Below are positions 4,465 through 63,137 of a DNA stretch of 64,000 nt, in pieces; within the stretch, counting starts at the first letter, position 1, and each line of letters opens with the position of its first letter. The translations under genes were made by a program, and so were the position numbers. The stretch covers positions 186,001 to 250,000 of the IMG/VR virus record IMGVR_UViG_3300030329_006583, one strand, 5' to 3'. The notes beneath the pieces were generated by a model that was not told the DNA's origin, did no database searches, and was given only the letters and a program-made list of their open reading frames with translations.

Positions 4465-4550
4465 TGGTACCGGAGACGGGACTCGAACCCGTAAGCCTTA
4501 AAGGCGACAGATTTTAAGTCTGTTGTGTATGCCAATTCCACCACTCCGGC
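4465..4550 (-). tRNA. tRNA-Leu(TAA)
   Basis: GCCGGAG acceptor, GGTTCGAGTCC T-arm, ACAGA-CTTAAAA-TCTGT anticodon arm, long variable arm, encoded CCA. Confidence 0.95.
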
Positions 4551-8431: not shown

Positions 8432-8648
8432 GTTGGGCCTCTAGTAACCTCTTTATTGATATAACACAATCCCTATAAAGAACATTAATGCTGTCTTCGC
8501 CCTGAAGCTTGTTTAAATGAGGTTTCCAGGCCATATCAATTTCATTTCCATTCACTACAATTGTTTCAATATCACCTTTTTTACGCAGCGCCAATTTATT
8601 TCCTTTAAATTGCTTGCGCAGTGCCGGCATAAAAGCCTTATATTTCAC
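8421..8648 (-). CDS. hypothetical protein
   Basis: 75-aa ORF overlapping the end of cysK. Confidence 0.55.
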   Translation of the reverse strand: MKYKAFMPALRKQFKGNKLALRKKGDIETIVVNGNEIDMAWKPHLNKLQGEDSINVLYRDCVISIKRLLEAQPTQ

Positions 8649-9549
8649 TGTTCATCTCCTTGGAAAAGATGTCCAGGTATCTTTCACCCCGATCGCAAAG
8701 AATAGTTACCACCACGCCACCCAACCTAGTTTTGTCAACCCACCTCTCCGCCGCCAAAACATTGGCGCCTGAACTAATTCCCACAAATAACCCATTCTCT
8801 TTGGCTAATCTTAAAGCCCGTTGTTTGGCATCTTGGGTAGATATTTTAATCTCTTCGTGCACAGCTGGGCGATATACTAAAAAATCGGCACCATCATTAA
8901 TCCCCTGTATGCCATGTTCCTTTGCATCCTCCTCGGGGGTAACCAACACCACTTTGGTTTCCATATCATTTGCATCTAGGTAATTTGAAATACCCATGAC
9001 AGTACCCCCGGTACCTGAACCTGCGATAAAGGCATCCCAATAATCAGGTATTTGCCTATCAATCTCTTGCGCTAAATAGGTTTGATGACACAAAATATTG
9101 TTTTCATTTTCAAATTGTCTAGGGGACCAATAATCATCATGTGCCAATAGCAAACCTTCCCGAATTAGAATCGCCGCTTCAAAATCACTAGCCCCCACTT
9201 CAATAATTTCCGCGCCGAAAGTACGCATCATCTGCTTGCGCTCGGCCGACATATTTTCTGGCATTATAATTTTTACCTTATAACCCAGTGCGGTGCCAAT
9301 AGCCGCCAAAGCAATACCTGTATTACCGGAACTGGCCTCTATCAATGTGGCATTATCAGGAATCTCATTATTCTCAAGTGCCTTTCTTAGCATAAAACTA
9401 ATAATTCTATCCTTAATAGAACCGGTAAGATTAAACGTCTCCAATTTTGCCCAGACTTTTTCATTAATCTTTACCAGTGGAGTATTACCTATCATTTTAT
9501 CAATTTCATCAAGCAACAATAGTTTTAAACGATTATCTTCTAACAACAT
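8638..9549 (-). CDS. cysK: PLP-dependent cysteine synthase (CysK/CysM family)
   Basis: IGNTPLV, N.TGSIKDR (PLP Lys), EASSGNTG, GSGTGGT, GISSGAN, DRGERY. Confidence 0.9.
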   Translation of the reverse strand: MLLEDNRLKLLLLDEIDKMIGNTPLVKINEKVWAKLETFNLTGSIKDRIISFMLRKALENNEIPDNATLIEASSGNTGIALAAIGTALGYKVKIIMPENMSAERKQMMRTFGAEIIEVGASDFEAAILIREGLLLAHDDYWSPRQFENENNILCHQTYLAQEIDRQIPDYWDAFIAGSGTGGTVMGISNYLDANDMETKVVLVTPEEDAKEHGIQGINDGADFLVYRPAVHEEIKISTQDAKQRALRLAKENGLFVGISSGANVLAAERWVDKTRLGGVVVTILCDRGERYLDIFSKEMNSEI

Positions 9550-24231: not shown

Positions 24232-24567
24232 TTACGCAGAAAAAGACGTTCCACACCCACATGTGGAAGTAGCATTGGGGTTACTAAATTCAAACCCGCT
24301 TCCGTTCAGCCCACCTGACCAATCCAGAACGGTGCCAATCAAAAATAAGTAGCTCTTTTTGTCTACATATAACTTAATTCCGCTCTCAGACGTGTATACC
24401 TTATCACCTTCTTGAATCTCAGTTTCCAATTCCAAGTTATAAGACAAACCTGCACAACCCCCACCTTGTACACCCACCCTTATTCCGTTAGCAGTAGAAT
24501 TTTCACGTTCCATGATCTTACGAATCTGTGTTTCTGCATCCGGTGTTATCTCAATGGTTGGTTTCAT
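24232..24567 (-). CDS. iscA: Fe-S cluster A-type carrier (IscA/HesB)
   Basis: GVQGGGCAGLSY and CGCGTSF motifs. Confidence 0.92.
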   Translation of the reverse strand: MKPTIEITPDAETQIRKIMERENSTANGIRVGVQGGGCAGLSYNLELETEIQEGDKVYTSESGIKLYVDKKSYLFLIGTVLDWSGGLNGSGFEFSNPNATSTCGCGTSFSA

Positions 24568-24940
24568 TCTTTTCTCTCCAATCTTTGATTGCAGCCTTGA
24601 TGGCATCCTCCGCCAACACGGAACAATGAATCTTGATGGGTGGCAAATTCAATTCCTCGACAATCTCCACGTTTCTTATCTTTTCGGCATTGTCAACTGT
24701 CATTCCCTTTACCCACTCGGTCGCCAGTGAACTAGCGGCAATCGCACTCCCACAACCAAAAGTCTTGAATTTGGCATCTTCAACAATGCCTTCATCATTT
24801 ACCTTGATTTGCAATTTCATAACATCACCACATTCAGGAGCACCGACCAAACCGGTGCCCACTGTAGTGTCTGTTTTATCCATTGATCCAACGTTCCTGG
24901 GATTTTTGTAATGTTCAAGCACTTTATCTGAGTATGCCAT
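24551..24940 (-). CDS. iscU: Fe-S cluster scaffold IscU
   Basis: YSDKVLEHYKNPRNVG, GAPECGDVM, KTFGCGSAIA, LPPIKIHCSVL. Confidence 0.95.
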   Translation of the reverse strand: MAYSDKVLEHYKNPRNVGSMDKTDTTVGTGLVGAPECGDVMKLQIKVNDEGIVEDAKFKTFGCGSAIAASSLATEWVKGMTVDNAEKIRNVEIVEELNLPPIKIHCSVLAEDAIKAAIKDWREKNETNH

Positions 24941-24942
24941 TT

Positions 24943-25302
24943 TTAGCTCTTGAGTTTTCTACCTGGTCTTGTTGCATGCTCATGTGTTTTTGATGCTGCC
25001 GCTTCAACCATTCTGGCGGGCACGTTCTTGAGCGTTTTCTTGCCGAACACAATATCATAATGGCCAATGGCACCGTTCCTGTCAAGACTATGCCACACAA
25101 TTTTACCCACCCTTTTAGCCGGGATCCCATATGCCTCCTGCAAAGCTGAAGACTTCAGCTTACCATGTGTCAGTCACGTGTGCCCGATCAATTCTTCCTC
25201 TTCGGGATCCAACTCCGCTTGTTCCATACCTGACCCGAATGGTGCAGCTTTCTTCAATTCTTCTTTAATAATTTGCCTAAGTTGTCTCTTCGTAATTTTC
25301 AT
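24943..25302 (-). CDS. candidate selenoprotein: type-A leader, in-frame TGA at codon 43 (25174-25176)
   Basis: Manual translation MKITKRQLRQIIKEE...LIGHT(TGA)LTHGKLKSSALQEAYG...KTHEH...; the frame stays open for 76 sense codons after the TGA; hairpin 3' of the TGA. Confidence 0.7.
25143..25161 (-). promoter_or_regulatory. candidate bacterial SECIS hairpin
   Basis: AAGCUGAA-GUC-UUCAGCUU: 8-bp stem, loop starts with GU, 20 nt after the UGA. Confidence 0.6.
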
Positions 25303-25643
25303 AACTTATATTTTCTCCATGCATATGCAGGGCGATATTTTAAATAATGTTCATCATATTGGTTGGTGTATGCCTCTCGTTCAAATCTTATGGATTTATA
25401 TGCATCAATAAAATTTTTATATTTCCATAGTGATATTATAAAATCAAAAAGATATATCAAATAAAAACCAACGATGGCAGTCTCAAATTGTTGACGAATA
25501 TGGATCATTTCATGTCGTAATATTGTTTTATTACCTTCCCCTCTCACAAAGATAAATGGAAAAAGTGCAATTGCTTCGACATTAAATGCCCAACTAAATA
25601 GGCGCGGAATGCGACTGTGTTTAAAAATAAATGGTATCACCAT
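25299..25643 (-). CDS. HExxH-containing hypothetical phage protein
   Basis: LRHEMIHIRQQ...FEREAY. Confidence 0.65.
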   Translation of the reverse strand: MVIPFIFKHSRIPRLFSWAFNVEAIALFPFIFVRGEGNKTILRHEMIHIRQQFETAIVGFYLIYLFDFIISLWKYKNFIDAYKSIRFEREAYTNQYDEHYLKYRPAYAWRKYKL

Positions 25644-25704: not shown

Positions 25705-26742
25705 TCACTTAGAATAATTAATGTGAGTAGAACTTTCAATTGCACCATTAGGTGTCTGGCGAATGAATTGGGCCCGGGCATGAAGATGTGAAATGGAATT
25801 AGCACCGGTATAAGAAAGACCTGAACGAATACCCACGGAAATTGTTTGTACAATATCGGCCAAAGGACCTTTCATTGGGATTATTGTGGCTACCCCTTCA
25901 ATAGAATTAGCGCGTCCCCGCCAATCATATTGTGCCTCGACAGACGCCATACCCCGATAGGCTTTATATGCAGTGCGCACCGAATGACCATCCACTACCT
26001 CAGATTTCTCAATAACAGCGCCCGGAGATTCAGGGGTACCGGCCAACATAGAGCCTAACATCACACAATCAGCTCCGGCAGCCAAGGCCTTCACAATATC
26101 GCCACTATTCCTAATACCTCCGTCAGCAATAAGCAGGACATTAGCATCAGCGCTAGCACAATCCATAACTGATTGCAAAGTTGGCATGCCGTGACCGGTT
26201 TGAATACGAGTGCTACATATCGATCCTCCGCCAATGCCAATCCTGACGCTATCTGCACCCCAATCGGCCAAATCCTCTACCGCTGTGCGGCTAGCCACAT
26301 TTCCTGCCATGATGTGCACCTTAGATCCTAAAACCTCCCTCAATTTAAGGAGGGCACGTTTCATGCGCACATGATGACCGTGAGCAACATCAACACAAAT
26401 CACCTTAGCACCATAGCTAACGAGAGCCCCAGCACGAGAAACATAATCTCCTGTTACCCCTACCGCAGCCCCACATATTGCCCCACTAGCCACAATTTTT
26501 TTCACCATATCAAATTGTGTTTGTGGGCTATTATATCGATGTACAATACCGAGTCCCCCCAACCTACTGATTTCGACTGCCGTATCCACACCTGTTACAG
26601 TGTCCATGGGGCTTGAAATAATAGGTAATTTCAAAACGCCAACCTTGGGAATTTCTACACTAAGATCCACCTCTGTCCGGCTCTCAATAGCTGAATACTG
26701 GGGGGCTAAAAGAACATCGTCAAAACAAACTGTTTCCCTCAT
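25705..26742 (-). CDS. IMP dehydrogenase / GMP reductase family protein (no CBS domains)
   Basis: [33 protein letters not shown] (catalytic Cys), ADGGI, YRGMAS. Confidence 0.9.
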
Positions 26743-30804: not shown

Positions 30805-31839
30805 TTATACACTTTGTTGATACAACCGTAAAGCCTCAATTTGACGTTCATTTAAATTTTGAGGAATAACAATTTCCACCTTTGTTAAGTGATCGCCTCG
30901 CCTTCCTTTGTGATCCTCTATCCCTTTACCTTTCATTCTCAAAATGGAATTAGGTTGAGTGCCGGCCGGAACATTAATATCCGTCAGGCCATGTACTGTC
31001 TTCACCTTAGTCATTCCCCCTAGGGTTGCAGTAACCATATCTACATGTAATACATTAAGCACATTAAGACCATCCCTACCATAATACGGTGATTGTTGAA
31101 TTCTGACGTATACGTTCAAATCACCAGGTGGCATTACGGATTGGGTGCTTTCGCCTTTTCCTTTAATTTGAACCACATCACCATCATCAATCCCCTTCGG
31201 AATTTGAATCTCAATGCCTTCCTTATTTACAACCTTCCCTTTACCGGTACAACTTTGGCACTTTTCTTTTATTGTTTTCCCATGCCCGCCACAAGATGGA
31301 CATGTGGTAGTAACACTAAAAAACCCTTGCTGCCCAATCACCTGCCCTCGGCCTCCGCATGTAATGCATGTTTGCGGCAATGTACCAGGTTTACAGCCGG
31401 AACCAGAACAAGTAACACAATTAACATAACGTTCAAGTTCTAGAGTGCGTACACAACCTTTAACCGCCTCATCAAAAGACAACGGAATTTCTACGTCAAT
31501 ATTGCGATTGCGCTGGACGCGATGAGTTTGTCTTCCAAAGAAATCACCGAAAATACTACCAAATTGATCAAAGATATCCCCAAATCCCGCAGAGGTGGCC
31601 CCAAATCCATCAAAATTAAACGCATCATGTCCACCAGCGTCATATTGTGCACGTTTCTCCGGATCACTTAATACCGCATATGCTTCACTAATTTCCTTAA
31701 ACTTTTCTTCTGCCTTAATATTATCTGGGTTTTTATCTGGATGATATGTAACGGCAAGTTTACGATAAGCTTTTTTGATTTCTGCCCCGGTGGCATTTTC
31801 ACTTACCCCTAACAAGGTGTAATAATCTTTTTTTGACAT
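30805..31839 (-). CDS. dnaJ: chaperone DnaJ
   Basis: J domain with HPD, G/F region, four CxxCxGxG repeats, C-terminal domain. Confidence 0.95.
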
Positions 31840-31842
31840 GGA

Positions 31843-33312
31843 TTATTCCGATCTTCTCTTAAACTCTTTCATTAATTTTTCCGCCTGCTCCTCATATTCT
31901 GCGAGATTTGCCCAAGATTTATCAGGGGAAAGCATACTTTCATCAATTCCATTAAATTTTACCGGAATTTTCAAACCTGTATAAGGATGAAGTTGATAAT
32001 CTGCTTTTTTTAATGTTCCATCATGAATACCGGCTATTATCTTTCGAGTTACATCGATGGGCATACGATGGCCTATCCCATACCCGCCACCGGTCCACCC
32101 TGTATTAACAAGCCAACAATCTACTTTATGCTTCTCAATTTTTCCCTTTAATAAGTGTGCATATTCCTGAGGAAACCGGGGCATAAATGGTGCGCCGTAA
32201 CAATAGGAAAAAGTTGCCTCCGGTTCTTTCACCCCTGCCTCGGTGCCAGCCACCTTGGCCGTATACCCCAGAAGAAAGTGTTGTACAGCTTCCTCGGGAG
32301 TAAGCTTGGAAACCGGGGGTAGAATCCCAAAGGCATCACATGTTAACATTACAACATTGGCTGGATGTCCAGCGGCACCAGTTTTACTGGAATTACTAAT
32401 ATATTCAATTGGGTAAGATGCACGTGTGTTCTCTGTGAGTGTTGCATCATTAAAATCTGGGGTTCTATCATCATGAAGGATAACGTTCTCTAGAATGGCA
32501 CCGTGCCTTTGGCAGGCATTCCAGATTTGTGGTTCAGCTTTCGCGTCAAGCCGAATCACCTTGGCATAACAACCGCCTTCAAAATTATAAAGACCTGTGT
32601 CCGACCAAGAGTGTTCATCATCCCCAATCAATACCCGATCTTCCTCCGACGAAAGTGTTGTCTTACCTGTCCCAGACAGTCCAAAAAATATTGCCGGAGC
32701 CCCTCCATCCTCTGCGGTGTTCACAGAACAATGCATGGGCAGAATTCCTTTTGCCGGCAGAAGAAAATTCAGAACAGTGAATACGCTTTTCTTAATTTCC
32801 CCGGCATAATAAGTACCGCTAATCAATATTTCTTGTTCTTGAAATGAAATGAGAACCATAGGATCTGAGGTAAAGGTCGGTGCGGCATAAATCGTCCATT
32901 CATCTTCTTGCCCTGTTAACATGTGTTCAATCAATTCGGGCCTAACAAACATATTCCTTGCAAATATACTGTGCCACAATAATGTTGTATTGACTTTAAG
33001 CCTCAAAGTGTTTGCAGGATCACGATTGGCGTAAAGCGTTTGTGTATATATTCCGGTTTCCCCCGCTTTTGCAAGGTGCTCTTTCATCCTATCACGGGTA
33101 TACAGAAATTCGTGATGGGTAATACTTTGATTGGCATCCCAATTAATTTTTCCTTGCGTAATGGAATCACACACAATAGATTTTGCCTTAGGTGAACGAC
33201 CCGTGCAATCGCCGGTAGCGGTGACCAAGGCACCACCCCCAGATTCATTAGCTTCCCCCAATTGGAGGGACATCCGTGTTAATTCTTTTAATGAAAATTC
33301 ATCTAATAACAT
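31843..33312 (-). CDS. pckA: phosphoenolpyruvate carboxykinase (ATP)
   Basis: TGRSPK, YAGEIKK, PMHCS, FFGLSGTGKTTLS, IGDDEH, NFEGGCYAK, ENTRASYP. Confidence 0.95.
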   Translation of the reverse strand: MLLDEFSLKELTRMSLQLGEANESGGGALVTATGDCTGRSPKAKSIVCDSITQGKINWDANQSITHHEFLYTRDRMKEHLAKAGETGIYTQTLYANRDPANTLRLKVNTTLLWHSIFARNMFVRPELIEHMLTGQEDEWTIYAAPTFTSDPMVLISFQEQEILISGTYYAGEIKKSVFTVLNFLLPAKGILPMHCSVNTAEDGGAPAIFFGLSGTGKTTLSSEEDRVLIGDDEHSWSDTGLYNFEGGCYAKVIRLDAKAEPQIWNACQRHGAILENVILHDDRTPDFNDATLTENTRASYPIEYISNSSKTGAAGHPANVVMLTCDAFGILPPVSKLTPEEAVQHFLLGYTAKVAGTEAGVKEPEATFSYCYGAPFMPRFPQEYAHLLKGKIEKHKVDCWLVNTGWTGGGYGIGHRMPIDVTRKIIAGIHDGTLKKADYQLHPYTGLKIPVKFNGIDESMLSPDKSWANLAEYEEQAEKLMKEFKRRSE

Positions 33313-33323
33313 TTATACTTCCT

Positions 33324-34247
33324 TTAAGCGGCGGCAATTAAGTGTTTAAAATCTTCAAGGTATTTAAACAACGCCTGTTCTTTGGCTTTACATTCTAACA
33401 CCACATCCAAATCTAACCCCAAATCTTGAAAAGGTTCATAATAATATGTAGAATGTGTACATGCAGGAACTTTGGGATCCTCGTATTTTTTCTTGGAATT
33501 AGAATGATGACATGTAGGTGTCACATCCCCCCAAGTTGAAGCCGCCATATGAAGAGCCTCAGAATAAGACTGATCTTGTGGACCTAATTGAAAGTGGTGT
33601 GAATCAAATACAATAGGAATGCCGACTCGGCGGTATACGCCATCATATAATTGTTTAGTAGAAAACATGTTTCGTTTGTCATCATTCTCAACGGTTAACC
33701 TCCTTTGAGTTGTGGGTTGTAGCAATTCAAAATTTTTGCAAAAGCGAGCCAAAGCAGAGGCACGATCTCCATAGGCACCACCAACATGAATGTTAATCTT
33801 GGAATTATGATCAGCAGGCATGCCTAACATGTCCATAATAATAGCATGATTGTCTAATTCCCTAAGGGCATTATCTACCACGTGTTTTTTAGGGCTGGCG
33901 AGGACACAAAATTGACCGGGGTGAAAAGACAATCGCTGACCACTATGATGAGCCATGCGGCCGGTGGATGCCAACACTTTACGGATCTCCGATATATCCG
34001 GTAAATCATCGAAGCGATATTCTGACATCCACGGAAAGAGGCACGAACTAATGCGAAATACGCCTACGTTGTGTTCATTATTCCATTCCACAATTCGCTG
34101 AAGTGATTTTACATTGCTTAATGCAATTTCACTAGCGTAAGGCAAACCCTTGGCCAACCATGTCCTTTTAATCATTCCGCGGTTGGCGCTAATCTTTTCT
34201 TTTTTTTGTAGGGTCATATTAATACAGGCATATCCGAATCGGGTCAT
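33324..34247 (-). CDS. uvsE: UV DNA damage endonuclease
   Basis: FGYACIN, FRISS, RLSFHPGQF, INIHVGG, LTVENDD, FDSHH, VLECKAKE. Confidence 0.92.
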   Translation of the reverse strand: MTRFGYACINMTLQKKEKISANRGMIKRTWLAKGLPYASEIALSNVKSLQRIVEWNNEHNVGVFRISSCLFPWMSEYRFDDLPDISEIRKVLASTGRMAHHSGQRLSFHPGQFCVLASPKKHVVDNALRELDNHAIIMDMLGMPADHNSKINIHVGGAYGDRASALARFCKNFELLQPTTQRRLTVENDDKRNMFSTKQLYDGVYRRVGIPIVFDSHHFQLGPQDQSYSEALHMAASTWGDVTPTCHHSNSKKKYEDPKVPACTHSTYYYEPFQDLGLDLDVVLECKAKEQALFKYLEDFKHLIAAA

Positions 34248-35473: not shown

Positions 35474-37615
35474 TTATTCGGCACAGGCATTCTCATCCAA
35501 AATTTCTAGAAGATTTTCATACATGGTGGCCGCAGATTGTGTTAATTCATACCACTTACCACCAAACTGTGTTAAAGGTTCCCACCCTGTCAATTCACCA
35601 TTCCACTTTTGGGCATTTTTTAATGTTTCCGGAGTGAAGGTATAAATTTTAAGATCAACTGTACCCTGAATGGTTTGCAGTATCTCTGATTGAGTTAACC
35701 CATATCCCATGTTAACACCGCCCAAATCCTTGTACAAATAACTTTGTCCCTCTTCGTCTGTAAAAACAATAACTACCCTTTTTGCATCATCTCGCCAATT
35801 AATGATAAATTGATCAAGCGGAGGCTGAGAATCCACGGTTTGCATGGTGCTGTTCCATGTCAAAGACGATAAAGGCCACGGTAATGAAGCAGCGGAACAC
35901 AAATTATGAATTGCTAAGTAAACAGCATCATACAACATTTCCACACCACCGTTCAAAGAATTGGGATCAAGCACCGACAATTGTGCCATAAATTGTGAAA
36001 ATTCTGTAAGTGGACTGATCAACTGAAGATATTCAATTGGGCTCCACGCGCCTTGTTGCGGTGGCACCGTTGGCCCAACCACTAACCCCCATTTAATTAC
36101 TTCTTCATCGCTATAATTTGTAGCAAACATGTTTAGTGCGGTCATGACAGCTTCAATCTCAATATTCATTGAACCAGACCAATCGATAATAAAAAGAATA
36201 TCGGTATCCTCCATTTCCTTTCCATCATCTATAATGCCGTCACAATTATCATCAGTGCCATTACATGCATCCTGATCTGCCGGCACAACCTCATCTAAAC
36301 AGAGGTTTGGTACAAAAAGTTCCTCCCCCGCCTCAGTCGTATAATTATTGCCCCACTCACCTTGATGACATATGAGATGACCCGGTTCACATATTCCCAC
36401 AAACAATGTCTCAGGAGGACCGGTATAACAGGCTTCTATAAGATCTTCATCAACCAATTGATTGCAATTATCGTCGTGATTATTGCACATTTCATCTTCA
36501 ACAAACCCCTTAAACGGATCACAATTTGGGGCCGGGGGTTTTTCCCAATAACATTGGGCGTAACACTGGGTCTGTATTATTTCCACACAATCTTCATCTA
36601 CACATTCACATGTTTTATACCCACCCCCGCATTCTAAGGGTGATTCAAAACACGGAAAAAGAACGCCAACAAGATCAATCGTACATAAACAATCCAAGCC
36701 TTCATCAATCAATCCATCACAATTATCATCAAACCCATTGCAAATTTCTTCAAAAGGTTGTTTGGCGGAACACCCAATCCAGTTACCATTGACACAAAAT
36801 TCCAGACCATCCCCACATACAGTGGAACAAGGTTGTATGAGATCTTCATCAATCAGCCCATCGCAGTCATCATCAAATCCATTACAAACATCTTCTGGCA
36901 CCGGACCACATTGACCACATACGTTAAGTTGATCTTCATCCACTAAACCGTCGCAGTCGTTGTCTTTGTAATCACAAATTTCCTCTTCCGGATCAGGCCC
37001 TATGCAGATTTCCATGCCATCAACACAAATCAAGTCACCTAACCCACACGGAGTTTCACAAGGAACAATTAAAATATCTTCATCAATTTCCCCATCACAA
37101 TCATTGTCTAGGTTGTCACATATTTCATCAAAACATGGATTACAATCTGAATATTTCCAAACCCCTTTTTCACACCACTTCTGCTGGCTCCCTTGTTGAT
37201 CATCCACCAAACACTCAATAATTTCCACAGTATCATTTGAAGGATCACATTCTAATTTTTCCTCGCAAGGACCTAACTCAATAATTTGAGGAGGATCCTT
37301 ACAAATATCTGTAACCAATTTAAATTGCCATACTGCGTCTAAAGGTGGGCAGAAATACCATTCCTCCTGATAACAATCTTGCATATATTGAAACTCTAAA
37401 TTAGGTATAGTTGCAGAATTAGCCAAGGGGGGTAAATCCTTTATCTTTTCAGCAATTTCTTCAAATGTATATACAGGAGTTTCATCACCAGTATCATTCA
37501 CAAATTCACCATAACCGGGGGATTTATCTGAGCAGGCGACAAAAAATAAAAGAATCAGCAATAAGCATAATGTGCTAACAAGAAAGGTTATAATTGAATT
37601 GAAGATATGTTCCAT
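35474..37615 (-). CDS. lipoprotein with Cys-rich E.C(D/N)..D(N/D)(D/N)CDG.(I/V)DE repeats and a C-terminal vWA domain
   Basis: LFFVAC lipobox; about 6 repeats; DILFIIDWSGSM MIDAS motif. Confidence 0.8.
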   Translation of the reverse strand: MEHIFNSIITFLVSTLCLLLILLFFVACSDKSPGYGEFVNDTGDETPVYTFEEIAEKIKDLPPLANSATIPNLEFQYMQDCYQEEWYFCPPLDAVWQFKLVTDICKDPPQIIELGPCEEKLECDPSNDTVEIIECLVDDQQGSQQKWCEKGVWKYSDCNPCFDEICDNLDNDCDGEIDEDILIVPCETPCGLGDLICVDGMEICIGPDPEEEICDYKDNDCDGLVDEDQLNVCGQCGPVPEDVCNGFDDDCDGLIDEDLIQPCSTVCGDGLEFCVNGNWIGCSAKQPFEEICNGFDDNCDGLIDEGLDCLCTIDLVGVLFPCFESPLECGGGYKTCECVDEDCVEIIQTQCYAQCYWEKPPAPNCDPFKGFVEDEMCNNHDDNCNQLVDEDLIEACYTGPPETLFVGICEPGHLICHQGEWGNNYTTEAGEELFVPNLCLDEVVPADQDACNGTDDNCDGIIDDGKEMEDTDILFIIDWSGSMNIEIEAVMTALNMFATNYSDEEVIKWGLVVGPTVPPQQGAWSPIEYLQLISPLTEFSQFMAQLSVLDPNSLNGGVEMLYDAVYLAIHNLCSAASLPWPLSSLTWNSTMQTVDSQPPLDQFIINWRDDAKRVVIVFTDEEGQSYLYKDLGGVNMGYGLTQSEILQTIQGTVDLKIYTFTPETLKNAQKWNGELTGWEPLTQFGGKWYELTQSAATMYENLLEILDENACAE

Positions 37616-38765: not shown

Positions 38766-38843
<78 letters not shown>

Positions 38844-40029: not shown

Positions 40030-41910
40030 TTAAACATCAGTAATTTCTGGCTCAGGGGAACCCGGGTTTGGATCCGTGGGATTAACGTCTTCCGGACTGA
40101 CGGGGGCTGATGCCGCCATTTTTTCATAAGCAATTTTTGCCACATTCTGAACACATGCATTTAACGCATTATAAGCATCATCAACCTCTTGGCGTGTTTC
40201 AGATGTTAAAGCGCTTTTGGCACTTTCAGCGGCAGTTACCAACGCCTCAATATCAGCTTCATCCAAACTTTCCGCCATGTTTTCCTTCATTTTAAAAGCC
40301 TGGTGAACTAGGGAATCTAATTTATTTCTAGATTCAATCATCTCACGTTTTTTCTGATCTTCAGCTTCGTATTTGGTGGCCTCCTTGATTTTTTCTTCAA
40401 TCTCCTCGGGGTTTAGGCCCGTAGAATCTGTAATAACAATACTTTGATCCTTACCGGTGGCCTTGTCGCTGGCAGACACTGTCAAAATACCATTAGCATC
40501 AATATCAAAGGTTACTTCAATTTGTGGTACACCTCTCGGTGCAGGTGGAATTCCATCCAATGTAAATTTGCCCAGTGTACGATTATCACCCGCCATCTGC
40601 CTTTCACCCTGAAGTACATGTACCTCGACTGTTGATTGACCATCTGCTGCGGTAGAAAATATTTCCTGCTTTTTAGCCGGAATTGTAGTATTACGCTCAA
40701 TGAGCCGAGTACACACACCGCCCATCGTTTCAATCCCCAAAGATAAAGGGGTAACATCCAACAACAGGATGTCTTTTACATCCCCACTCAGCACGCCTCC
40801 CTGAACCGCGGCGCCCAAAGCAACTACCTCATCCGGATTAACACCTTGTGACGGAGACTTTCCAAAAAATTCCTCCACCTTTTTAACCACCAAGGGAATC
40901 CGTGTAGAACCACCAACCAACAAAATCTGATCAATATCTGTTGATTTCTTACCGGCGTCCTTAAGTGCCTGCTTACAAGATTTAAAAGTCTTATCAATCA
41001 CGCCCTCAATCAATTGTTCGAATTTAGAACGCGTCAAATTCATCACCAAGTGTTTGGGCCCATTAGCGTCAGCAGTCAAAAATGGCAAATTAATATCAGC
41101 TGTCATAGCCGAGCTTAATTCCACCTTTGCCTTTTCGGCAGTTTCACGAATACGTTGCAAAGCCATTTTATCCTCTGCAACATCTACCCCTGTTTCCTTC
41201 TTAAATTCCGCAATCATATAATCAATGAGAGCCTCATCAACGTTATCACCGCCTAGGTATGTATCCCCTGAAGTTGACAGTACTTCCACGACATCTCCGG
41301 AAACATCCAAAACTGACACATCAAAAGTACCACCACCAAAATCATAAACCACTACCACTTGTTCTGTATTGGTGCCGAGACCATAAGCCAAAGCAGCGGC
41401 AGTGGGTTCATTAATAATTCTCTTGACATCTAGGCCCGCAATCGTACCTGCATCCTTGGTCGCCTGTCGTTGGGAATCATTAAAATAGGCAGGAACTGTA
41501 ATTACGGCTTCTGTAATTTTCTCCCCCAGGTAATTCTCAGCAGATCGCTTTAATTTTTGTAGCACTTTGGCTGAAATTTCTGGTGGTGTGAACGCCTTGT
41601 CTCCCACGGTGATGTTAACGCCACCCTTCTTACCTGCACTAACATTATACGCAACCTTGCCGGCAACGTCTGATACTTCATTGAATTTAGATCCAATGAA
41701 TCTTTTCGCAGAATAAATCGTCTGTTCCGGTTTGACAACAGCTTGTCGGCGTGCGGTGACACCAACCAAAATATCGTCATCATTAAAAGATACCACAGAA
41801 GGTGTTGTGCGAGAACCTTCCTCGTTCACCATCACAACAGGTTGTTCTCCTTCCATAACCGCCACGCAGCTGTTAGTAGTCCCCAAATCAATACCAATAA
41901 TTTTACCCAT
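40030..41910 (-). CDS. dnaK: Hsp70 chaperone DnaK
   Basis: [48 protein letters not shown]. Confidence 0.97.
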
Positions 41911-42006
41911 GATCTCTTCCTCCATTCATTTCCACGGTAAAGTTTTTTCTTACAATGTCAATATAGTCATCGATGTGTCGTTGAACACCCTTGCAATGCA
42001 TTTTTT

Positions 42007-43427: not shown

Positions 43428-43728
43428 CACTATCCTCCTTATGTGGTCCCGCATTCATATCATTAAACATTTCAATCATACTTTCTTGAAACCTGGGATC
43501 ACGTGCTGTTTTGTCTATTTGATTAATATCGGTGACGCCATATAATTCACATAATGGACTTGCCAGTTTTTTCATAGCTCGCAGAAAAACATTTCTTGCA
43601 GTTGCATGATTCATTTTATGACCGCGCTCTGTCATGATTTCTGCGATTGTACGGTAATCATTACCATCATACTCAGAAGAAACTGTGGCATAACCACCTT
43701 CACTCTTAAATCCTTTAGGCATGCTCAT
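43402..43728 (-). CDS. sigma region-4-like HTH protein
   Basis: YRTIAEIMTERGHKMNHATARNVFLRAMKKL; ATGA overlap with the sigma stop. Confidence 0.55.
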   Translation of the reverse strand: MSMPKGFKSEGGYATVSSEYDGNDYRTIAEIMTERGHKMNHATARNVFLRAMKKLASPLCELYGVTDINQIDKTARDPRFQESMIEMFNDMNAGPHKEDSDGSTIMVA

Positions 43729-44507
43729 TGAATCATCTCCTTGGTTTGTTGATTTAATTTTAGAAAATCCTTTTCATTCACCACAAAATCCGAACGAGAC
43801 TCAGGGGTTGAAATACCAAACCTTAAACGAATCACCTGTTCTTCCCTGTGACTCAAGCTTTTTAAGGCCTCCTTGAGCAATCGTGATACCTTTTCTCCGT
43901 CCAGCAAAGACTCAACGTTAGGCGTATCCAAATCTGGAATCACCTCCCGCAAAGTCCTGCTACCGGAATCACCGCTGTTTTTATAATTGATCGGTCGATC
44001 AAGGGAAACGGGGGATGTTGCACATGTAGAAATATTTTTAAGCATTTTCAATGTAACGCCAACCAAATCGGCAACTTCTTCTTGGGATGGTTGTACACCG
44101 AATTCCTTATAATATTCTTCCTGCGCTTGCTTTATTTTCCACAACAGATTACGCGTATATGAAGGTAGTTTTACAGAAGTCGATTGTGAAGTGACATGAC
44201 GCCGAACAGCCTGCTTTATCCACCAACAGGCATATGTTGAAAACTTAAAACCCCTTCGCCAATCGTAACGATCAACCGCTTTCATCAATCCAATGTTAGA
44301 CTCCTGAATTAAATCTTCTAAATCACAACCTTTGTCTTGATATTTTTTAGCAATACTGATGGCCAATCGAATATTAGCCCTCACCATATGATCACGCGCC
44401 CGAGTATCCCCTTTTTCAATGCGCTGAGATAATTCAATTTCTTGTTCACGGGTCAATAGGGATGTTTTTGACACATCTTTGAAAAAACTTTCCAAACTAT
44501 TTTGCAT
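43725..44507 (-). CDS. sigma70-family (RpoD/RpoS-like) sigma factor lacking region 4.2
   Basis: LLTREQEIEL (1.2), NIRLAISIAKKY, DLIQE.NIGL, FSTYACWWIKQA (2.3/2.4), PVSLD (3); ends soon after VIRLRFGI. Confidence 0.88.
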   Translation of the reverse strand: MQNSLESFFKDVSKTSLLTREQEIELSQRIEKGDTRARDHMVRANIRLAISIAKKYQDKGCDLEDLIQESNIGLMKAVDRYDWRRGFKFSTYACWWIKQAVRRHVTSQSTSVKLPSYTRNLLWKIKQAQEEYYKEFGVQPSQEEVADLVGVTLKMLKNISTCATSPVSLDRPINYKNSGDSGSRTLREVIPDLDTPNVESLLDGEKVSRLLKEALKSLSHREEQVIRLRFGISTPESRSDFVVNEKDFLKLNQQTKEMIQ

Positions 44508-44813: not shown

Positions 44814-46424
44814 TTATGTTAAAATTTCTTCATCATCCACAATGGCACAACCCACAGAAAGTAACATCCTCGCAACTGATGATGCATTTTCCAAGGCTGT
44901 TCTCACAACCTTTACGGGATCAATGATTCCTGTTTCAAACATATTTACCCACTCCCCGGTGGCCGCATTATATCCACTATTATAACTTGTTTTTATTGCC
45001 TTTTGCACGACAATTTCTGAACTTCCTCCAGAATTATCTACAATTTGTTTAAGCGGGGCGCAACATGCTTTGGAAACAATGTCAATGCCTACTTTAAAAT
45101 CCTCTGATTCCTTAACAGATTTGCGATTTTTTTTCAAACTGGATGATGCACGAACTAACGCCATACCACCCCCTGATACCACGCCTTCTTCGGAGGCAGC
45201 CTGGGTGGCGTGTAACGCATCTTCTACGCGATCTTTTCTCTCCAGCAATTCTACCTCGGTAGGTGCACCCACACGAAGAACAGCAACCCCACCTGCCAAG
45301 CGTTGAATTCTTCTCGCCAAAGCCTCTCTTTCACCCGGGTCAAGGGTCATATCCTCTAAAATAGATTTTACCTCACACAATGCCTGTTTCCGAGATTCTT
45401 CACTGCCCCCTACGCCCACAAACACAGTGCGATGTTTATAACACAAAACCTTCTTACATTTTCCTAAATCATTTAATTCGATTTTCTGTAATGACTCAGG
45501 ATCAGCTGTCACCACTGGCTCACAATCCAACATTACCCCCATATCACGTATAGCAGCAACTCGAGATTCACCAAATTCCGGAGCTCGAATAGCACATACA
45601 TTCAAAGTACCTTTCATTCGATTTAAAACCAGGCCTTGCAATGCCTCCCCATCCACATCATCTGCCACAATGAGTAGAGAACGCTGTTGGCGACTTACTT
45701 TTTCTAATATAGGCAGAATCTCCTGTAAGGATGTAAGTTTCTTATTGATAAGCAAAACGGCGGGATTTTCCAAAACTGCTGCCATTTTATCCTGATCAGT
45801 CACAAAATAAGGGGAAAGAAAACCGCGATCTAATTCTAAACCCTCCACCACATCCAAGCTAGTTTGAAACCCCTTGGCTTCCTCCACAGTAATAATACCA
45901 TCTTTCCCAACCTGTTTCATGGCCGAAGCGATTAATTCACCAATGGAATCCTCTCCATTTGCTGAGATTGTACCTACCTGCGCAATTTCTTCCATGCTGG
46001 TAATGGGATTTGCCATTTCATGCAATTCACTAATAACATACTTTACCCCATATTCCATTCCCTTTTGAAGCTCTGCCGAAGAATAACCTGCAGCTAGCAT
46101 CTTTAAACCTTCGGAAAACATAGTCTGGGCAAGGACGGTAGCAGTTGTGGTACCATCCCCGGCAACATCCGCAGTGCGAGAAGAAGCTTCCTTCACCATC
46201 TGCACCCCTAAATTCCTAAACTTATCACGCAAATTAATGGATTTAGCAACTGTTACCCCATCCTTGGTCAAATGCGGCATCATTCCGGGGCGTTCAATAA
46301 TAACATTCTGCCCTTTTGGCCCCATGGTAACCTTAACAGCATTGGCCAAAATATTGACCCCGTCAACCAATTCTGACCGGGCTGTTTCATCAAATTTTAA
46401 AGTTTTAAATTCTGTATCGTGCAT
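44814..46424 (-). CDS. groL: chaperonin GroEL
   Basis: VKVTMGPKGQNV, TKDGVTVA, AGDGTTTA, KLAGG-like RLAGGVAV, GIIDP.KV; no GGM tail. Confidence 0.95.
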   Translation of the reverse strand: MHDTEFKTLKFDETARSELVDGVNILANAVKVTMGPKGQNVIIERPGMMPHLTKDGVTVAKSINLRDKFRNLGVQMVKEASSRTADVAGDGTTTATVLAQTMFSEGLKMLAAGYSSAELQKGMEYGVKYVISELHEMANPITSMEEIAQVGTISANGEDSIGELIASAMKQVGKDGIITVEEAKGFQTSLDVVEGLELDRGFLSPYFVTDQDKMAAVLENPAVLLINKKLTSLQEILPILEKVSRQQRSLLIVADDVDGEALQGLVLNRMKGTLNVCAIRAPEFGESRVAAIRDMGVMLDCEPVVTADPESLQKIELNDLGKCKKVLCYKHRTVFVGVGGSEESRKQALCEVKSILEDMTLDPGEREALARRIQRLAGGVAVLRVGAPTEVELLERKDRVEDALHATQAASEEGVVSGGGMALVRASSSLKKNRKSVKESEDFKVGIDIVSKACCAPLKQIVDNSGGSSEIVVQKAIKTSYNSGYNAATGEWVNMFETGIIDPVKVVRTALENASSVARMLLSVGCAIVDDEEILT

Positions 46425-61406: not shown

Positions 61407-62015
61407 CTATATCCCGCCTTCAGCTGCGATTGGGCTAGCCCCTACACCCATCGGATCCACTAAATCCTGAGGGATGTCTAGACTAATATCGTACCTGAGA
61501 TCTAAAATATCCAACATCGCGGCTGCCTGCTCGGGCCCGTATTTGTCGGTGATATAATCTTCTGCTTTTTTTACAATTAACGCCTTCATATCCAGAAGTG
61601 AATCATAATTCTTGGCTAACCTTGCTACGTCACCTGCAAATGTTTCCATATCAATTACCGGAATTTCCTCCTGTTCGTAAAGCACACGAACTATTGAGTA
61701 TTTGTTGGCCTCATTTTGTGCCTGACCTTTGGCGGCATTGATAGCATCTGTCTCAAAATCCACAAAAAGGGCATTAAGTTCATCATCAACTGATTTACCC
61801 AAAGGTTCCACTTCATCCACCCCTGGTTCTATTTGGGCCTCTTCCGCCTCAGCTTCAACTTCCGCTTCTGGGCCTTCTTCATCACCAGGTGTTTCTTCCG
61901 CATCTTCCTCAGTGGCTTCTTCAGTATCAGCCATATCGGCTTCTTCTTCTTGTTCCACAAGGAGCCTGAACTCTTCGTTTATTAGCTTTTTTAAATACTT
62001 TTTTGTCAATTTCAT
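61407..62015 (-). CDS. acidic protein with a type-A leader
   Basis: MKLTKKYLKKLINEE. Confidence 0.7.
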   Translation of the reverse strand: MKLTKKYLKKLINEEFRLLVEQEEEADMADTEEATEEDAEETPGDEEGPEAEVEAEAEEAQIEPGVDEVEPLGKSVDDELNALFVDFETDAINAAKGQAQNEANKYSIVRVLYEQEEIPVIDMETFAGDVARLAKNYDSLLDMKALIVKKAEDYITDKYGPEQAAAMLDILDLRYDISLDIPQDLVDPMGVGASPIAAEGGI

Positions 62016-62710
62016 TTGATTGCCTTCCCGATTTTTTCAGCCTTTTTAACCCTTTTCTCAATTACATCCCAATCTAATTCTTTCATCATAGCAAAAACAT
62101 ACGTCTTTCTGTCATTCAAATAATCACGATAATAAGAATTTTCCGAACAATCTAAAACAACAATTGGAAACGATGCAAAAGGAACATTAATATTATGCAG
62201 ATCTACACACACATTAATATAACGTTGAAGAAAGGTATTATAGACAGTGACTGCCCACCCATTTCTAGATGACATAGCGCATGCAATAAAATCCTTTTGC
62301 CACGCATCAAAAGAACCAAAATCCCTCTCCAACCTTATAAAAGTAAGAGAATCCATTACTAATTGACTTTTGAGATCACTAATATTTTCAAAAAACAAAG
62401 CATTCAAAAATGAAGCATTAAGATTGTAGGTTTCATCAATCTTCAAAGAACGAAATTCTGAATTATTGGCATTTGCATCTTCACGATTAACAACATCCAA
62501 TTCAATACTAATACGATTAAGGGTATCTATGTATCCTTCAAGCAATTCAAAATGAGCACGTTTATTTTTTTCACTTAAAAATTCTGTAGCTAAATTATAT
62601 CGTTTGGCTTGGGTAACATATGCCTCCTTAATGGTGGCGTGTCCTTCTTTTTCTTCCAACCCCAACGTTTCCCTGATCGTTCTTTTTATTTCATCATCAG
62701 ATATGCTCAT
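62012..62710 (-). CDS. Fe/Mn superoxide dismutase-fold protein with degenerate metal ligands
   Basis: HFELLEGY, LNALFFENI, DFGSFDAWQKDF, GWAV, VLDCSENSYY. Confidence 0.75.
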   Translation of the reverse strand: MSISDDEIKRTIRETLGLEEKEGHATIKEAYVTQAKRYNLATEFLSEKNKRAHFELLEGYIDTLNRISIELDVVNREDANANNSEFRSLKIDETYNLNASFLNALFFENISDLKSQLVMDSLTFIRLERDFGSFDAWQKDFIACAMSSRNGWAVTVYNTFLQRYINVCVDLHNINVPFASFPIVVLDCSENSYYRDYLNDRKTYVFAMMKELDWDVIEKRVKKAEKIGKAIK

Positions 62711-62711
62711 T

Positions 62712-63137
62712 TTATTTAACCTCATATTCTTTTTCAAATTCTTCTTGATCCACCACAAACACCTCTTCATCAGGATCATCGGGTATTAATTCTGTTTGTA
62801 TTTTATCTAAATTAATTAATTCATCTTCACCTAATATTGCCGCAATTTTTTTATCACTGATCAAAGTATCCTCTTGATCGGGTGGGGGATCAAAACGGGG
62901 TTCATCAGGCAATCTTAAAACAATGTCAATTTTACCGGTCTCCGGATCTTCCAAAACATCATCCACAGTGTATTCATATTGAGAATCTTTATGCCTCACC
63001 TTTAAATCACGCGTTATAAGAATATTACCGTCGTCATCTATCACGTCAGATTCCCAAAGGGCTTCGTTTAAACGATCCTCGTAATAATTACGCAATAAAT
63101 CAATTATAACATTTTCTGATAAAATTTTATTTTTCAT
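62712..63137 (-). CDS. acidic hypothetical protein
   Basis: 141-aa ORF in the run. Confidence 0.6.
   Translation of the reverse strand: MKNKILSENVIIDLLRNYYEDRLNEALWESDVIDDDGNILITRDLKVRHKDSQYEYTVDDVLEDPETGKIDIVLRLPDEPRFDPPPDQEDTLISDKKIAAILGEDELINLDKIQTELIPDDPDEEVFVVDQEEFEKEYEVK

What the first reader, a model, noticed from the sequence alone, without database searches (positions are those of the whole stretch)
25143..25176. SECIS-like hairpin at the expected distance 3' of the UGA
On the coding strand: UGA-CUGACACAUGGU-AAGCUGAA-GUC-UUCAGCUU. This is a perfect 8-bp stem whose loop begins with GU, 20 nt after the UGA. The bacterial SECIS model is a stem-loop directly 3' of UGA with G (often GU) at the start of the apical loop, about 16-37 nt away; the E. 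coli fdhF loop is GGUC. A perfect inverted repeat inside coding sequence right after the only internal stop is unlikely to be accidental and independently supports Sec recoding.
Basis: partly seen in the sequence, partly recalled or inferred. Interest (0 to 1): 0.8.

Follow-up and report, generated by a model that had tools for sequence, protein, structure and literature searches.

The report
Phage selenoprotein gene with SECIS hairpin
The hairpin after the in-frame UGA is real, and comparison with over 80 related marine phage contigs marks it as a bacterial-type selenocysteine insertion signal in what appears to be an undescribed, virus-only selenoprotein family.

Summary
On the minus strand, TGA lies at 25176-25174. 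A 12-nt spacer follows, then a perfect 8-bp stem (25161-25154 with 25150-25143) and a GUC loop. It sits in a 119-codon gene (25302-24943) of a 267-kb marine jumbo phage.

In one sequence the hairpin is weak evidence. The comparative evidence is strong:
- Every relative in IMG/VR and metagenomes has TGA at this codon. There are three subfamilies: GHT-U-LTH, HK-U-MKEG and QHQ-U-FHH.
- Each has a 5-8 bp hairpin with its loop fixed 18-20 nt after the UGA.
- The stems carry compensatory changes that alter amino acids.
- A sister group, including T4-like cyanophage "cytidyltransferase" proteins, has Cys (TGT) at this codon and no positionally conserved hairpin.
- TGA ends 24 of 87 ORFs in the window, so the genetic code is standard.
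- The "W" that public databases show at this position is a table-4 gene-calling artefact.

The element meets all four constraints of the published bSECIS consensus. The host, its Sec machinery and actual selenium incorporation are not shown. The protein's function is unknown; it has an H-x-U/C motif before a Tudor/SH3-like barrel. I found no report of a phage-encoded bSECIS selenoprotein.

The parts
24943..25302 (-). Candidate selenoprotein gene: 119 codons plus a TAA stop. The ATG at 25302-25300 overlaps the TGA stop of the upstream gene (ATGA). The product has an N-terminal MKITKRQLRQIIKEEL helix, an acidic linker, the motif GHT-U-LTH, and a Tudor/SH3-like beta-barrel (WHSL...YD...HEH).
   Evidence: Translation. 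Homologues are conserved in the same frame on both sides of the TGA. AF2 model and fold searches.
25174..25176 (-). In-frame UGA, codon 43, proposed to encode selenocysteine.
   Evidence: TGA at the aligned codon in all 65 loci and all 28 loci. Cys (TGT) at the same profile column in 18 representative proteins and in the cyanophage homologue. The 'W' in ENA proteins is a table-4 artefact.
25162..25173 (-). 12-nt spacer (CUGACACAUGGU) between the UGA and the base of the stem.
   Evidence: The UGA-to-loop distance is constant at 20 nt in all 25 subfamily A sequences.
25143..25161 (-). bSECIS-like hairpin: 5' arm 25161-25154 (AAGCUGAA), apical loop 25153-25151 (GUC), 3' arm 25150-25143 (UUCAGCUU). 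It encodes K-L-K-S-S-A-L.
   Evidence: Covariation: 96.5% of cells paired against 36-59% in slid controls, and 4 of 8 pairs changed on both sides. Synonymous-recoding test p = 0.0055.
25299..25643 (-). Upstream gene for a 114-aa small membrane protein with an HExxH motif, translationally coupled by the ATGA overlap. It is context, not part of the recoding signal.
   Evidence: A homologue lies within 3 kb of the family gene in 13 loci of subfamilies A and B. It has no Pfam match.
24232..24940 (-). Downstream genes iscU (24551-24940) and iscA (24232-24606). IscU starts 2 nt after the stop of the candidate selenoprotein gene. They are context only.
   Evidence: Pfam NifU_N at 5e-53 and Fe-S_biosyn at 1.2e-18.

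Best explanation
The hairpin is a bacterial-type selenocysteine insertion sequence (bSECIS) lying inside the coding sequence of a small phage gene.

Proposed mechanism: when the ribosome reaches UGA at codon 43, the stem-loop 12 nt downstream recruits the host's SelB-GTP-Sec-tRNA(Sec) complex. The loop presents G/GU at its 5' side. Selenocysteine is inserted and translation continues into the Tudor/SH3-like C-terminal domain, giving a 119-aa selenoprotein with an H-x-U-x-x-H motif. Without Sec decoding, a 42-aa fragment would result.

Shown here: the UGA, the frame and the hairpin are all conserved; the stem covaries; Cys homologues lack the hairpin; the genome uses the standard code.

Inferred, not shown: SelB binding, a Sec-competent host, and selenium in the protein. 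The protein's role is unknown. I favour a redox or metal-binding site in which Sec/Cys is flanked by invariant His, but with low confidence.
For: 1. The UGA is universal and the frame continues. All 65 loci with the WHSL..YD domain and all 28 loci of a third subfamily carry TGA at the same codon. Protein conservation holds on both sides in one frame. In subfamily C the UGA is codon 12 after a start with a Shine-Dalgarno sequence, and no start codon follows it.

2. The hairpin sits at a fixed place. The loop starts 20 nt after the UGA in 25 of 25 subfamily A sequences, 18 nt in 24 of 26 B sequences, and 19-20 nt in 14 of 14 C sequences. Stems are 5-8 bp. Loops are GUC/GGG/GGA, AGUU and GUC/GGUC(N). 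The three subfamilies build the stem from unrelated sequences that encode different peptides.

3. Covariation. In A, 96.5% of cells are paired (slid controls 36-59%) and 4 of 8 pairs change on both sides. In B, 95.1% are paired (controls 15-56%) and 3 of 7 pairs change on both sides. Several compensations change amino acids, for example KLSSAL to RLSSDL or KLSSTL.

4. Sec/Cys pair. Of the proteins from the profile search of 1.84 billion representatives that span this column, 18 (including the cyanophage protein P0027, added) have a genuine Cys there, in an H-x-C-A-x-H motif. In Cys-form DNA the best hairpin is scattered at +17 to +34, with a median dG of -0.9 against -6.4 to -7.0 in Sec forms.

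5. Standard code. TGA ends 24 of 87 ORFs in the window, including IscU, GMP reductase, sigma-70 and SOD. It ends 49/160, 57/179 and 11/59 long ORFs in the flanks of subfamilies A, B and C.

6. The element meets the published bSECIS constraints (PMC13188914, read): a 3-nt loop, an 8-bp stem, G then U at the start of the loop, 20-nt spacing, and MFE of about -10 kcal/mol.

7. It is not an assembly error: the sequence is identical in two runs at about 32x, though these may be the source of this DNA.
Against: - No Sec machinery was seen. There is no tRNA-Sec or suppressor tRNA in the window or in 60 related loci. None of the 30 window proteins scanned against Pfam, including all of 255 aa or more, matched a selA, selB or selD family.
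- The host is unknown. The family is absent from 185,579 bacterial and archaeal genomes and from cultured phages.
- Hairpin-only energies are modest. Only 16 of 65 reach -7.5 kcal/mol when the isolated stem-loop is evaluated, and some subfamily B stems are only 5-6 bp.
- There is no bulged U as in the E. coli fdhF SECIS.
- No Rfam SECIS model matches, although bacterial SECIS elements are poorly represented in Rfam.
- In subfamily B the codon after the UGA is usually ATG, which on its own would allow a stop-restart reading.
- There is no RNA or protein evidence.
Confidence: 0.8

Rival explanations
1. SelB-independent programmed read-through. The hairpin slows or remodels the ribosome so that a near-cognate tRNA (Trp, Cys or Arg) or a phage suppressor tRNA(UCA) encoded elsewhere in the genome decodes the UGA. 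This would give a fixed ratio of the 42-aa and 119-aa products.
For: The UGA is followed by C in the window (UGA-C, a weak termination context by general knowledge). The host and its Sec machinery are unknown. No Sec genes were found in the window. UGA read-through is used by other phages, such as the Qbeta A1 protein (general knowledge).
Against: The base after the UGA varies among relatives (C, A, G, U). The homologues that lack the UGA have Cys specifically, not Trp. The hairpin has the G-first apical loop and the spacing of the bSECIS model in all three subfamilies. No suppressor tRNA was found in the window or in 60 loci. I know of no hairpin-stimulated stop read-through mechanism in bacteria other than SECIS.
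Confidence: 0.1
2. The UGA is a true stop and there are two cistrons: a short N-terminal peptide gene, then a downstream domain gene expressed by termination-reinitiation. The hairpin would regulate the coupling or mRNA stability.
For: In subfamily B, 21 of 26 sequences have ATG directly after the TGA. Gene callers split the gene in this way (P0003, P0008; many hits begin at profile position 14).
Against: In the window and all of subfamilies A and C, the next codon is CTG, CTA, CTT, GCG or TTT, and no nearby in-frame start with an SD exists. B also has CTG, GTG and ATA variants. The frame is kept in all 93 loci. The invariant His two codons before the UGA belongs to the same H-x-C/U motif that is contiguous in the Cys forms.
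Confidence: 0.05
3. The element is an artefact or decay: a nonsense mutation or pseudogene, a sequencing error, a chance palindrome, or an alternative genetic code (TGA = Trp, table 4).
For: Public protein databases show W at this position. The single-sequence fold z-score is about 0. About 9% of open in-frame TGAs in the window have some bSECIS-like hairpin by loose criteria.
Against: The W entries translate only 'with_TGA=W', so they are gene-caller artefacts. The TGA is conserved in more than 80 independent contigs down to about 35% protein identity. TGA is an ordinary stop in the window and in related loci. The stretch is identical in two assemblies.
Confidence: 0.02

Closest known systems
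Bacterial SECIS elements (bSECIS consensus of Zhang and Gladyshev 2005, as summarised in PMC13188914; prototype E. coli fdhF/fdnG)
   Same: A stem-loop lies inside the ORF directly 3' of an in-frame UGA. The apical loop is small, with G followed by U or G in its first two positions. The spacing is 18-20 nt, within the 16-37 nt range. The upper stem is 5-8 bp. Cys-containing homologues exist. The spacer of about 11-12 nt matches my recollection of the E. coli minimal SECIS position.
   Different: The stem is perfect, with no bulged U (a SelB determinant in E. coli, from my own knowledge). The loop is 3 nt (GUC) rather than GGUC in the window, although subfamily C does have GGUC(N). The element is carried by phage genomes rather than cellular ones. 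SelB binding has not been tested.
Viral selenoproteins of eukaryotic viruses (molluscum contagiosum virus and fowlpox virus glutathione peroxidases; PMC8310308)
   Same: A virus-encoded gene whose UGA must be recoded to Sec by the host machinery. In fowlpox the SECIS also lies in the coding region.
   Different: Those are captured cellular GPx genes with eukaryotic-type SECIS elements. This is a bacterial-type SECIS in a family found only in phages, with no cellular homologue detected.
Cys-form relatives: T4-like cyanophage proteins annotated 'cytidyltransferase' (PHROG 764; e.g. S-RIM8 YP_007518263) and PHROGs 22379 and 11470
   Same: The same domain, with the H-x-C-A-x-H motif aligned to H-x-U-L-x-H, followed by the (W/M/S)H(S/T)(L/M)...G...YD...H-x-H barrel.
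   Different: They have Cys (TGT) instead of UGA and no conserved downstream hairpin. The domain is often embedded in much longer proteins. The 'cytidyltransferase' name has no Pfam support.
Stop-codon-recoded phages (TGA=Trp or TAG=Gln with suppressor tRNAs)
   Same: An in-frame stop codon in a phage gene has to be read through.
   Different: In those phages many genes carry recoded stops. Here a single codon in one gene family is affected, and TGA is otherwise a normal stop. No suppressor tRNA was seen.

Membership tests
Bacterial SECIS (bSECIS consensus model, PMC13188914 Fig. 2A) | Apical loop of 3-9 nt on an upper stem of 4-16 bp | tested here: met
   The window has a 3-nt loop (GUC) on a perfect 8-bp stem. 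Relatives have stems of 5-8 bp and loops of 3-5 nt.
Bacterial SECIS (bSECIS consensus model, PMC13188914 Fig. 2A) | At least one G in the first two loop positions, usually followed by G or U | tested here: met
   The window loop is GUC. Subfamily A has GUC, GGG, GGA or GAC; B has AGUU or AGUC; C has GUC, GGA or GGUC(N).
Bacterial SECIS (bSECIS consensus model, PMC13188914 Fig. 2A) | [quoted passage not shown] | tested here: met
   The distance is 20 nt in the window and in all 25 subfamily A sequences, 18 nt in 24 of 26 B sequences, and 19-20 nt in C.
Bacterial SECIS (bSECIS consensus model, PMC13188914 Fig. 2A) | MFE of -7.5 kcal/mol or lower | tested here: met
   The 42-47 nt after the UGA in the window fold at -9.8 to -10.2 kcal/mol. 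Across the family the result is mixed: the isolated stem-loop reaches -7.5 in only 16 of 65 sequences.
Bacterial SECIS, E. coli fdhF type | Bulged U in the upper stem plus a GGUC loop, the SelB contact points in E. coli (from my own knowledge) | tested here: not met
   The stem is perfect with no bulge and the loop is GUC. It is therefore not an E. coli-type SECIS, which does not bear on other SelB specificities.
Selenoprotein gene (comparative criteria) | In-frame UGA conserved among homologues, with protein conservation on both sides in the same frame | tested here: met
   93 loci, all with TGA, with H(-2) invariant upstream and WHSL/G/YD invariant downstream.
Selenoprotein gene (comparative criteria) | Homologues with Cys at the aligned position | tested here: met
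   18 proteins have Cys at this profile column: 17 representatives from the profile search plus the cyanophage protein P0027. The codon is confirmed as TGT in 14 distinct loci. On the tree the Cys forms make one group, with 92/93 support.
Selenoprotein gene (comparative criteria) | The structure covaries and is lost in the Cys forms | tested here: met
Selenoprotein gene (functional criteria) | The organism or host has tRNA-Sec, SelA, SelB and SelD | not testable with these tools
   The host is unknown. There is no tRNA-Sec in the window or in 60 loci, and none of the scanned window proteins matched a Sec-machinery family. The remaining 200 kb or so of the contig was not available.
Selenoprotein gene (functional criteria) | Selenium is incorporated at the UGA, in a SelB- and SECIS-dependent way | not testable with these tools
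   This needs 75Se labelling, mass spectrometry or reporter assays.
Alternative genetic code 4 (TGA = Trp) | TGA is not used as a stop, and many genes are interrupted by TGA under table 11 | tested here: not met
   TGA ends 24 of 87 ORFs in the window, including domain-complete IscU, GMP reductase and sigma-70. The flanks of relatives behave the same way.

The most novel reading that the evidence does not exclude
A large selenoprotein family that occurs only in viruses. Several lineages of uncultured marine phages, jumbo phages included, encode a Sec-containing H-x-U Tudor/SH3-like protein whose synthesis depends on hijacking the host's SelB/tRNA-Sec system through a phage-borne bSECIS. To my knowledge, and by the literature searches run here, this would be the first phage-encoded selenoprotein family. 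It would tie phage fitness to selenium supply and to Sec-competent hosts, and it would give a host-range marker. A more radical variant is that the hosts lack Sec machinery and the UGA-plus-hairpin is a new SelB-independent recoding signal; the evidence does not exclude this (about 0.1).
Probability: 0.75. Interest if true: 0.8.

Novelty: new member of a known kind. Interest (0 to 1): 0.75.

Why it matters
Known viral selenoproteins are two captured poxvirus glutathione peroxidases (PMC8310308). Recent reviews of the prokaryotic selenoproteome do not mention phages (PMC13188914). This family was not found in the GOS selenoproteome supplements.

If confirmed, the finding would matter in four ways:
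- Phages would be seen to exploit the host's 21st-amino-acid machinery, which makes expression of the phage gene depend on selenium.
- A conserved UGA plus SECIS would be a sequence marker that restricts candidate hosts to Sec-decoding lineages.
- It exposes a systematic annotation error. The family is stored in public databases either truncated at the UGA or with Trp at that position.
- It offers a compact natural set of SECIS variants, in three stem families with a fixed geometry, for studying SelB specificity.

Tried and rejected
- **Trp at the UGA.** The first protein alignment showed W at codon 43, suggesting a TGG-to-TGA nonsense mutation or code 4. I rejected this once the contigs proved to translate only with TGA = W and TGA proved to be a normal stop.
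- **Rfam.** There was no SECIS hit at a permissive threshold, only a chance palindrome match to a snoRNA model. This is uninformative because bacterial SECIS elements are poorly modelled.
- **Host identification.** Every route failed. Two scans of 185,579 genomes found no family member. tBLASTn of subfamilies B and C against 50,697 phage genomes found nothing. DnaK, a tail-fibre-like protein, RecA/UvsX and a head-completion protein have only distant matches (27-57% identity), including Microcystis, Flavobacterium and Roseobacter phages.
- **Function.** There was no match in Pfam at its thresholds. PHROGs gave only unknown-function families or a dubious 'cytidyltransferase' family. Fold searches gave only generic SH3/Tudor-like barrels with no significant PDB hit.
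- **Other selenoprotein candidates in the window.** None had support.
- **Alternative-frame ORF.** The 68-aa ORF (24924-25130) with a strong SD is rejected as a by-product of conserved Tyr-Gly codons.
- **Steps not taken.** I did not run complex prediction with E. coli SelB, because the hosts' SelB is unknown and shuffled-RNA controls would only test 'hairpin versus no hairpin'. I did not look for Sec machinery in the rest of the 267-kb contig, because no tool gives access to it.

Full report
**1. What is in the window**

Nearly all genes in the 64-kb window lie on the minus strand. The finding sits in a 119-codon frame, 25302-24943. Its ATG overlaps the TGA stop of the upstream gene (ATGA), and its TAA lies 2 nt before the iscU start. 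The frame has one internal stop, TGA at 25176-25174 (codon 43).

After a 12-nt spacer comes AAGCUGAA-GUC-UUCAGCUU (25161-25143). This is a perfect 8-bp stem with a 3-nt loop that starts 20 nt after the UGA.

The window belongs to IMG/VR contig IMGVR_UViG_3300030329_006583, which is 267,118 bp. It is a marine jumbo phage with three tRNAs (Leu-UAA, Met, Arg-UCU) and many host-like genes: DnaK, DnaJ, GroEL, PEPCK, UvdE, sigma-70, Fe/Mn SOD, a PLP enzyme, IscU, IscA, GMP reductase and a PP-loop ATPase.

**2. Is the hairpin more than chance?**

Taken alone, barely.
- The 91-nt region folds no better than dinucleotide shuffles (z = -0.04).
- A loose bSECIS-like hairpin follows 6 of the 65 open in-frame TGAs in the window.
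- Given the peptide it encodes, though, only 0.55% of synonymous recodings give a stem of 8 bp or more at that place.

The decisive evidence is comparative.

**3. A false lead**

The first homology search gave proteins with Trp at codon 43, GHTWLTHGKL. That pointed to a nonsense mutation or to code 4. The contigs that encode them translate to those proteins only 'with_TGA=W'. The W is therefore an artefact of table-4 gene calls on short contigs.

Code 4 is excluded. TGA terminates 24 of 87 ORFs in the window, including IscU, GMP reductase, sigma-70 and SOD at their normal lengths. It terminates 49/160, 57/179 and 11/59 long ORFs in the flanks of relatives.

**4. The family**

Scans of IMG/VR and metagenome assemblies gave 65 loci carrying the domain and 28 loci of a further subfamily. 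Every one has TGA at the aligned codon. There are three subfamilies:
- A: (I/V)GHT-U-LTH(V/G/A)K(R/L)K(D/G/S)SAL. The window belongs to this one.
- B: H(K/Q/T)-U-(M/L/V/I)KEG(K/R)LSSAL.
- C: MDKYNKSVQH(Q/N/T)-U-FHHATWG(S/D)(P/S)K.

The reading frame is continuous across the UGA in all of them. The invariant residues are His at -2, the UGA, then G, WHSL, G and YD. In C the UGA is codon 12 after a start that often has an SD, and no start codon follows it. The gene therefore cannot be made without decoding the UGA.

**5. The hairpin across the family**

| Group | Sequences | Stem | Loop start after the codon | Loops |
|---|---|---|---|---|
| A | 25 distinct | 7-8 bp | 20 nt in 25/25 | GUC, GGG, GGA, GAC |
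| B | 26 distinct | 5-7 bp | 18 nt in 24/26 | AGUU, AGUC |
| C | 14 distinct | 5-8 bp | 19-20 nt in 14/14 | GUC, GGA, GGUC(N) |
| Cys forms | 14 distinct | no consistent stem | scattered, 17-34 nt | no consistent loop |

(All.)

The stems are built from different sequences: AAGCUGAA/UUCAGCUU, AAGCGGAA/UUCUGCUU, CGGAGGAA/UUCCUCC, AAGCUG/CAGCUU, GUCUG/CAGAC and ACUUGGGG/CCCCAAGU. Several compensations change the encoded amino acids.

Pair counts confirm the structure. In A, 96.5% of cells are paired, against 36-59% when the 3' partner is slid, and 4 of 8 pairs change on both sides. In B, 95.1% are paired, against 15-56%, and 3 of 7 pairs change on both sides. No shuffle out of 500 reached the observed covariation score in either subfamily.

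**6. Cys homologues**

A profile of the domain, searched against 1.84 billion representative proteins, found 217 relatives. Among those that span the UGA column, 24 show the artefactual W. Eighteen proteins have a genuine Cys in an H-x-C-A-x-H motif: 17 from this search plus the cyanophage protein P0027, which I added.

T4-like cyanophage proteins annotated 'cytidyltransferase' (PHROG 764) belong to this Cys group. In 14 distinct Cys-form DNA segments the codon is TGT. Their best bSECIS-like hairpin falls anywhere from +17 to +34, with no consistent loop and a median dG of -0.9, against -6.4 to -7.0 kcal/mol in the Sec forms.

On a maximum-likelihood tree the Cys forms make one group (92/93 support). 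One Sec-to-Cys or Cys-to-Sec change is enough to explain the distribution, but the direction cannot be told without a root.

**7. Comparison with the known model**

The published bSECIS consensus (PMC13188914, Fig. 2A) has four requirements:
- a 3-9 nt loop on a 4-16 bp stem;
- G in the first two loop positions, mostly G followed by G or U;
- 16-37 nt between the UGA and the loop;
- MFE of -7.5 kcal/mol or lower.

The window's element meets all four. It lacks the bulged U of the E. coli fdhF element, so it is not an E. coli-type SECIS. SECIS elements differ between bacteria.

Across the family the isolated stem-loop energy is often weaker than -7.5. Rfam finds nothing.

**8. What is not shown**

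- There is no tRNA-Sec or suppressor tRNA in the window or in 60 related loci.
- None of the 30 window proteins scanned matched a Sec-biosynthesis or SelB family.
- The host is unknown. The family is absent from 185,579 bacterial and archaeal genomes and from 50,697 deposited phage genomes, apart from the Cys forms in cyanophages. It lies in virus-only clusters of the ESM Atlas.
- Neighbouring genes are only 27-34% identical to those of Microcystis, Flavobacterium or Roseobacter phages.
- By the literature, Pelagibacter lacks selC while Actinomarina has the full machinery (bioRxiv 10.64898/2026.04.03.716425). The Sec trait is common in marine communities (PMC5029168). Sec-competent marine hosts therefore exist, but none is linked to these phages.
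- The sequence with the TGA is identical in contigs of two marine metagenome runs at about 32x (these may be the source of this DNA). No RNA evidence was found.

**9. The protein**

AlphaFold2 with the family alignment gives a small beta-barrel for residues 31-119, with pLDDT 71.7. Its resemblance to SH3, Tudor and Agenet folds is only generic. The profile also weakly hits tandem-Tudor proteins.

The Sec/Cys lies at the N-terminal edge of the barrel, flanked by invariant or near-invariant His. A conserved H-x-H follows the barrel. A redox or metal site is plausible but untested.

In the window the gene sits between a small HExxH membrane protein and iscU-iscA. The HExxH gene recurs near the family gene in 13 loci. 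The isc genes do not recur.

**10. Verdict**

The rivals are:
- hairpin-assisted read-through without SelB (about 0.1);
- a stop-restart arrangement of two genes (about 0.05);
- an artefact, a pseudogene or code 4 (about 0.02).

Literature searches found no description of a phage-encoded bSECIS selenoprotein. The family's motifs are absent from the GOS selenoproteome supplements. A review of viral recoding lists only two poxvirus GPx genes (PMC8310308).

I therefore rate it a new member of a known kind, a canonical mechanism in an unexpected carrier, with interest 0.75.

Noticed in passing
Public protein records P0002, P0004-P0007, P0012-P0017 and P0003, P0008 (relatives of window 24943-25302): Public databases store this family in two wrong forms. 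Either the protein has Trp at the UGA (table-4 gene calls on short contigs), or it is truncated to the part after the UGA, starting at an ATG or TTG. This is a systematic annotation error that hides the Sec codon.
   Followed up: yes
window 24924-25130 (-): A 68-aa ORF in another frame is preceded by AGGAGG-N5-ATG and predicts a hydrophobic helix. It lies wholly inside the conserved C-terminal domain. Its ATG comes from the conserved Tyr-Gly codons (TAT GGN), and the SD from Gln-Glu codons. It is probably spurious.
   Followed up: partly
window 25299-25643 (-); also L013, L014, L064 (directly upstream) and L015, L017, L021, L023, L049, L050, L058, L059 (opposite strand): A small (about 114 aa) hydrophobic protein with an HExxH motif (RHEMIHI) and no Pfam match lies within 3 kb of the candidate selenoprotein gene in 13 loci of two subfamilies. 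In the window it is coupled to that gene by an ATGA overlap.
   Followed up: partly
L010, L011, L013, L014, L016, L022 and other related loci, next to the family gene: Runs of small neighbouring genes share the N-terminal leader MKITKxQLKxIIxEEL, also present in the window's protein. Some share a C-terminal motif RARHNCxNPGPKxKARYWSC. The shared leader recalls capsid-targeting or propeptide sequences of T4 internal proteins. That comparison is speculation from memory and was not tested.
   Followed up: no
window 1-64000: The phage stretch carries an unusual set of host-like genes: DnaK (40030-41925), DnaJ (30805-31839), GroEL (44814-46424), ATP-dependent PEPCK (31843-33312), UvdE (33324-34247), sigma-70 (43725-44507), Fe/Mn SOD (62012-62779), a PLP-dependent enzyme (8638-9549), IscU and IscA (24232-24940), GMP reductase (25705-26742), and a MopE-like metal-binding repeat protein (35474-37615).
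   Followed up: partly
L084 (Synechococcus phage S-RIM8, NC_020486.1 144155-145873) and PHROG 764: The 'cytidyltransferase' annotation of the cyanophage Cys-form proteins has no Pfam support. The only recognisable module is the H-x-C Tudor/SH3-like domain near the N-terminus, followed by long low-complexity, Lys/Ala/Ser-rich sequence. The name looks like a propagated misannotation.
   Followed up: partly
L128 and L130 (IMG/VR contigs with Cys forms): Some contigs carry two tandem paralogues with the motif KHDCATHVKHxEFGEGxC(I/M)PGQHT. This is a Cys-rich variant of the H-x-C-A-T-H motif that continues into a different downstream sequence.
   Followed up: no
L018-L020, L027, L035, L041, L046, L051, L060 (subfamily B loci): tRNA-Leu(UAA) and tRNA-Arg(UCU), and sometimes tRNA-Ile(UAU), lie 0.3-3 kb downstream of the family gene in many subfamily B contigs. 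The window carries the Leu and Arg anticodons elsewhere (4465-4550, 38766-38843).
   Followed up: no
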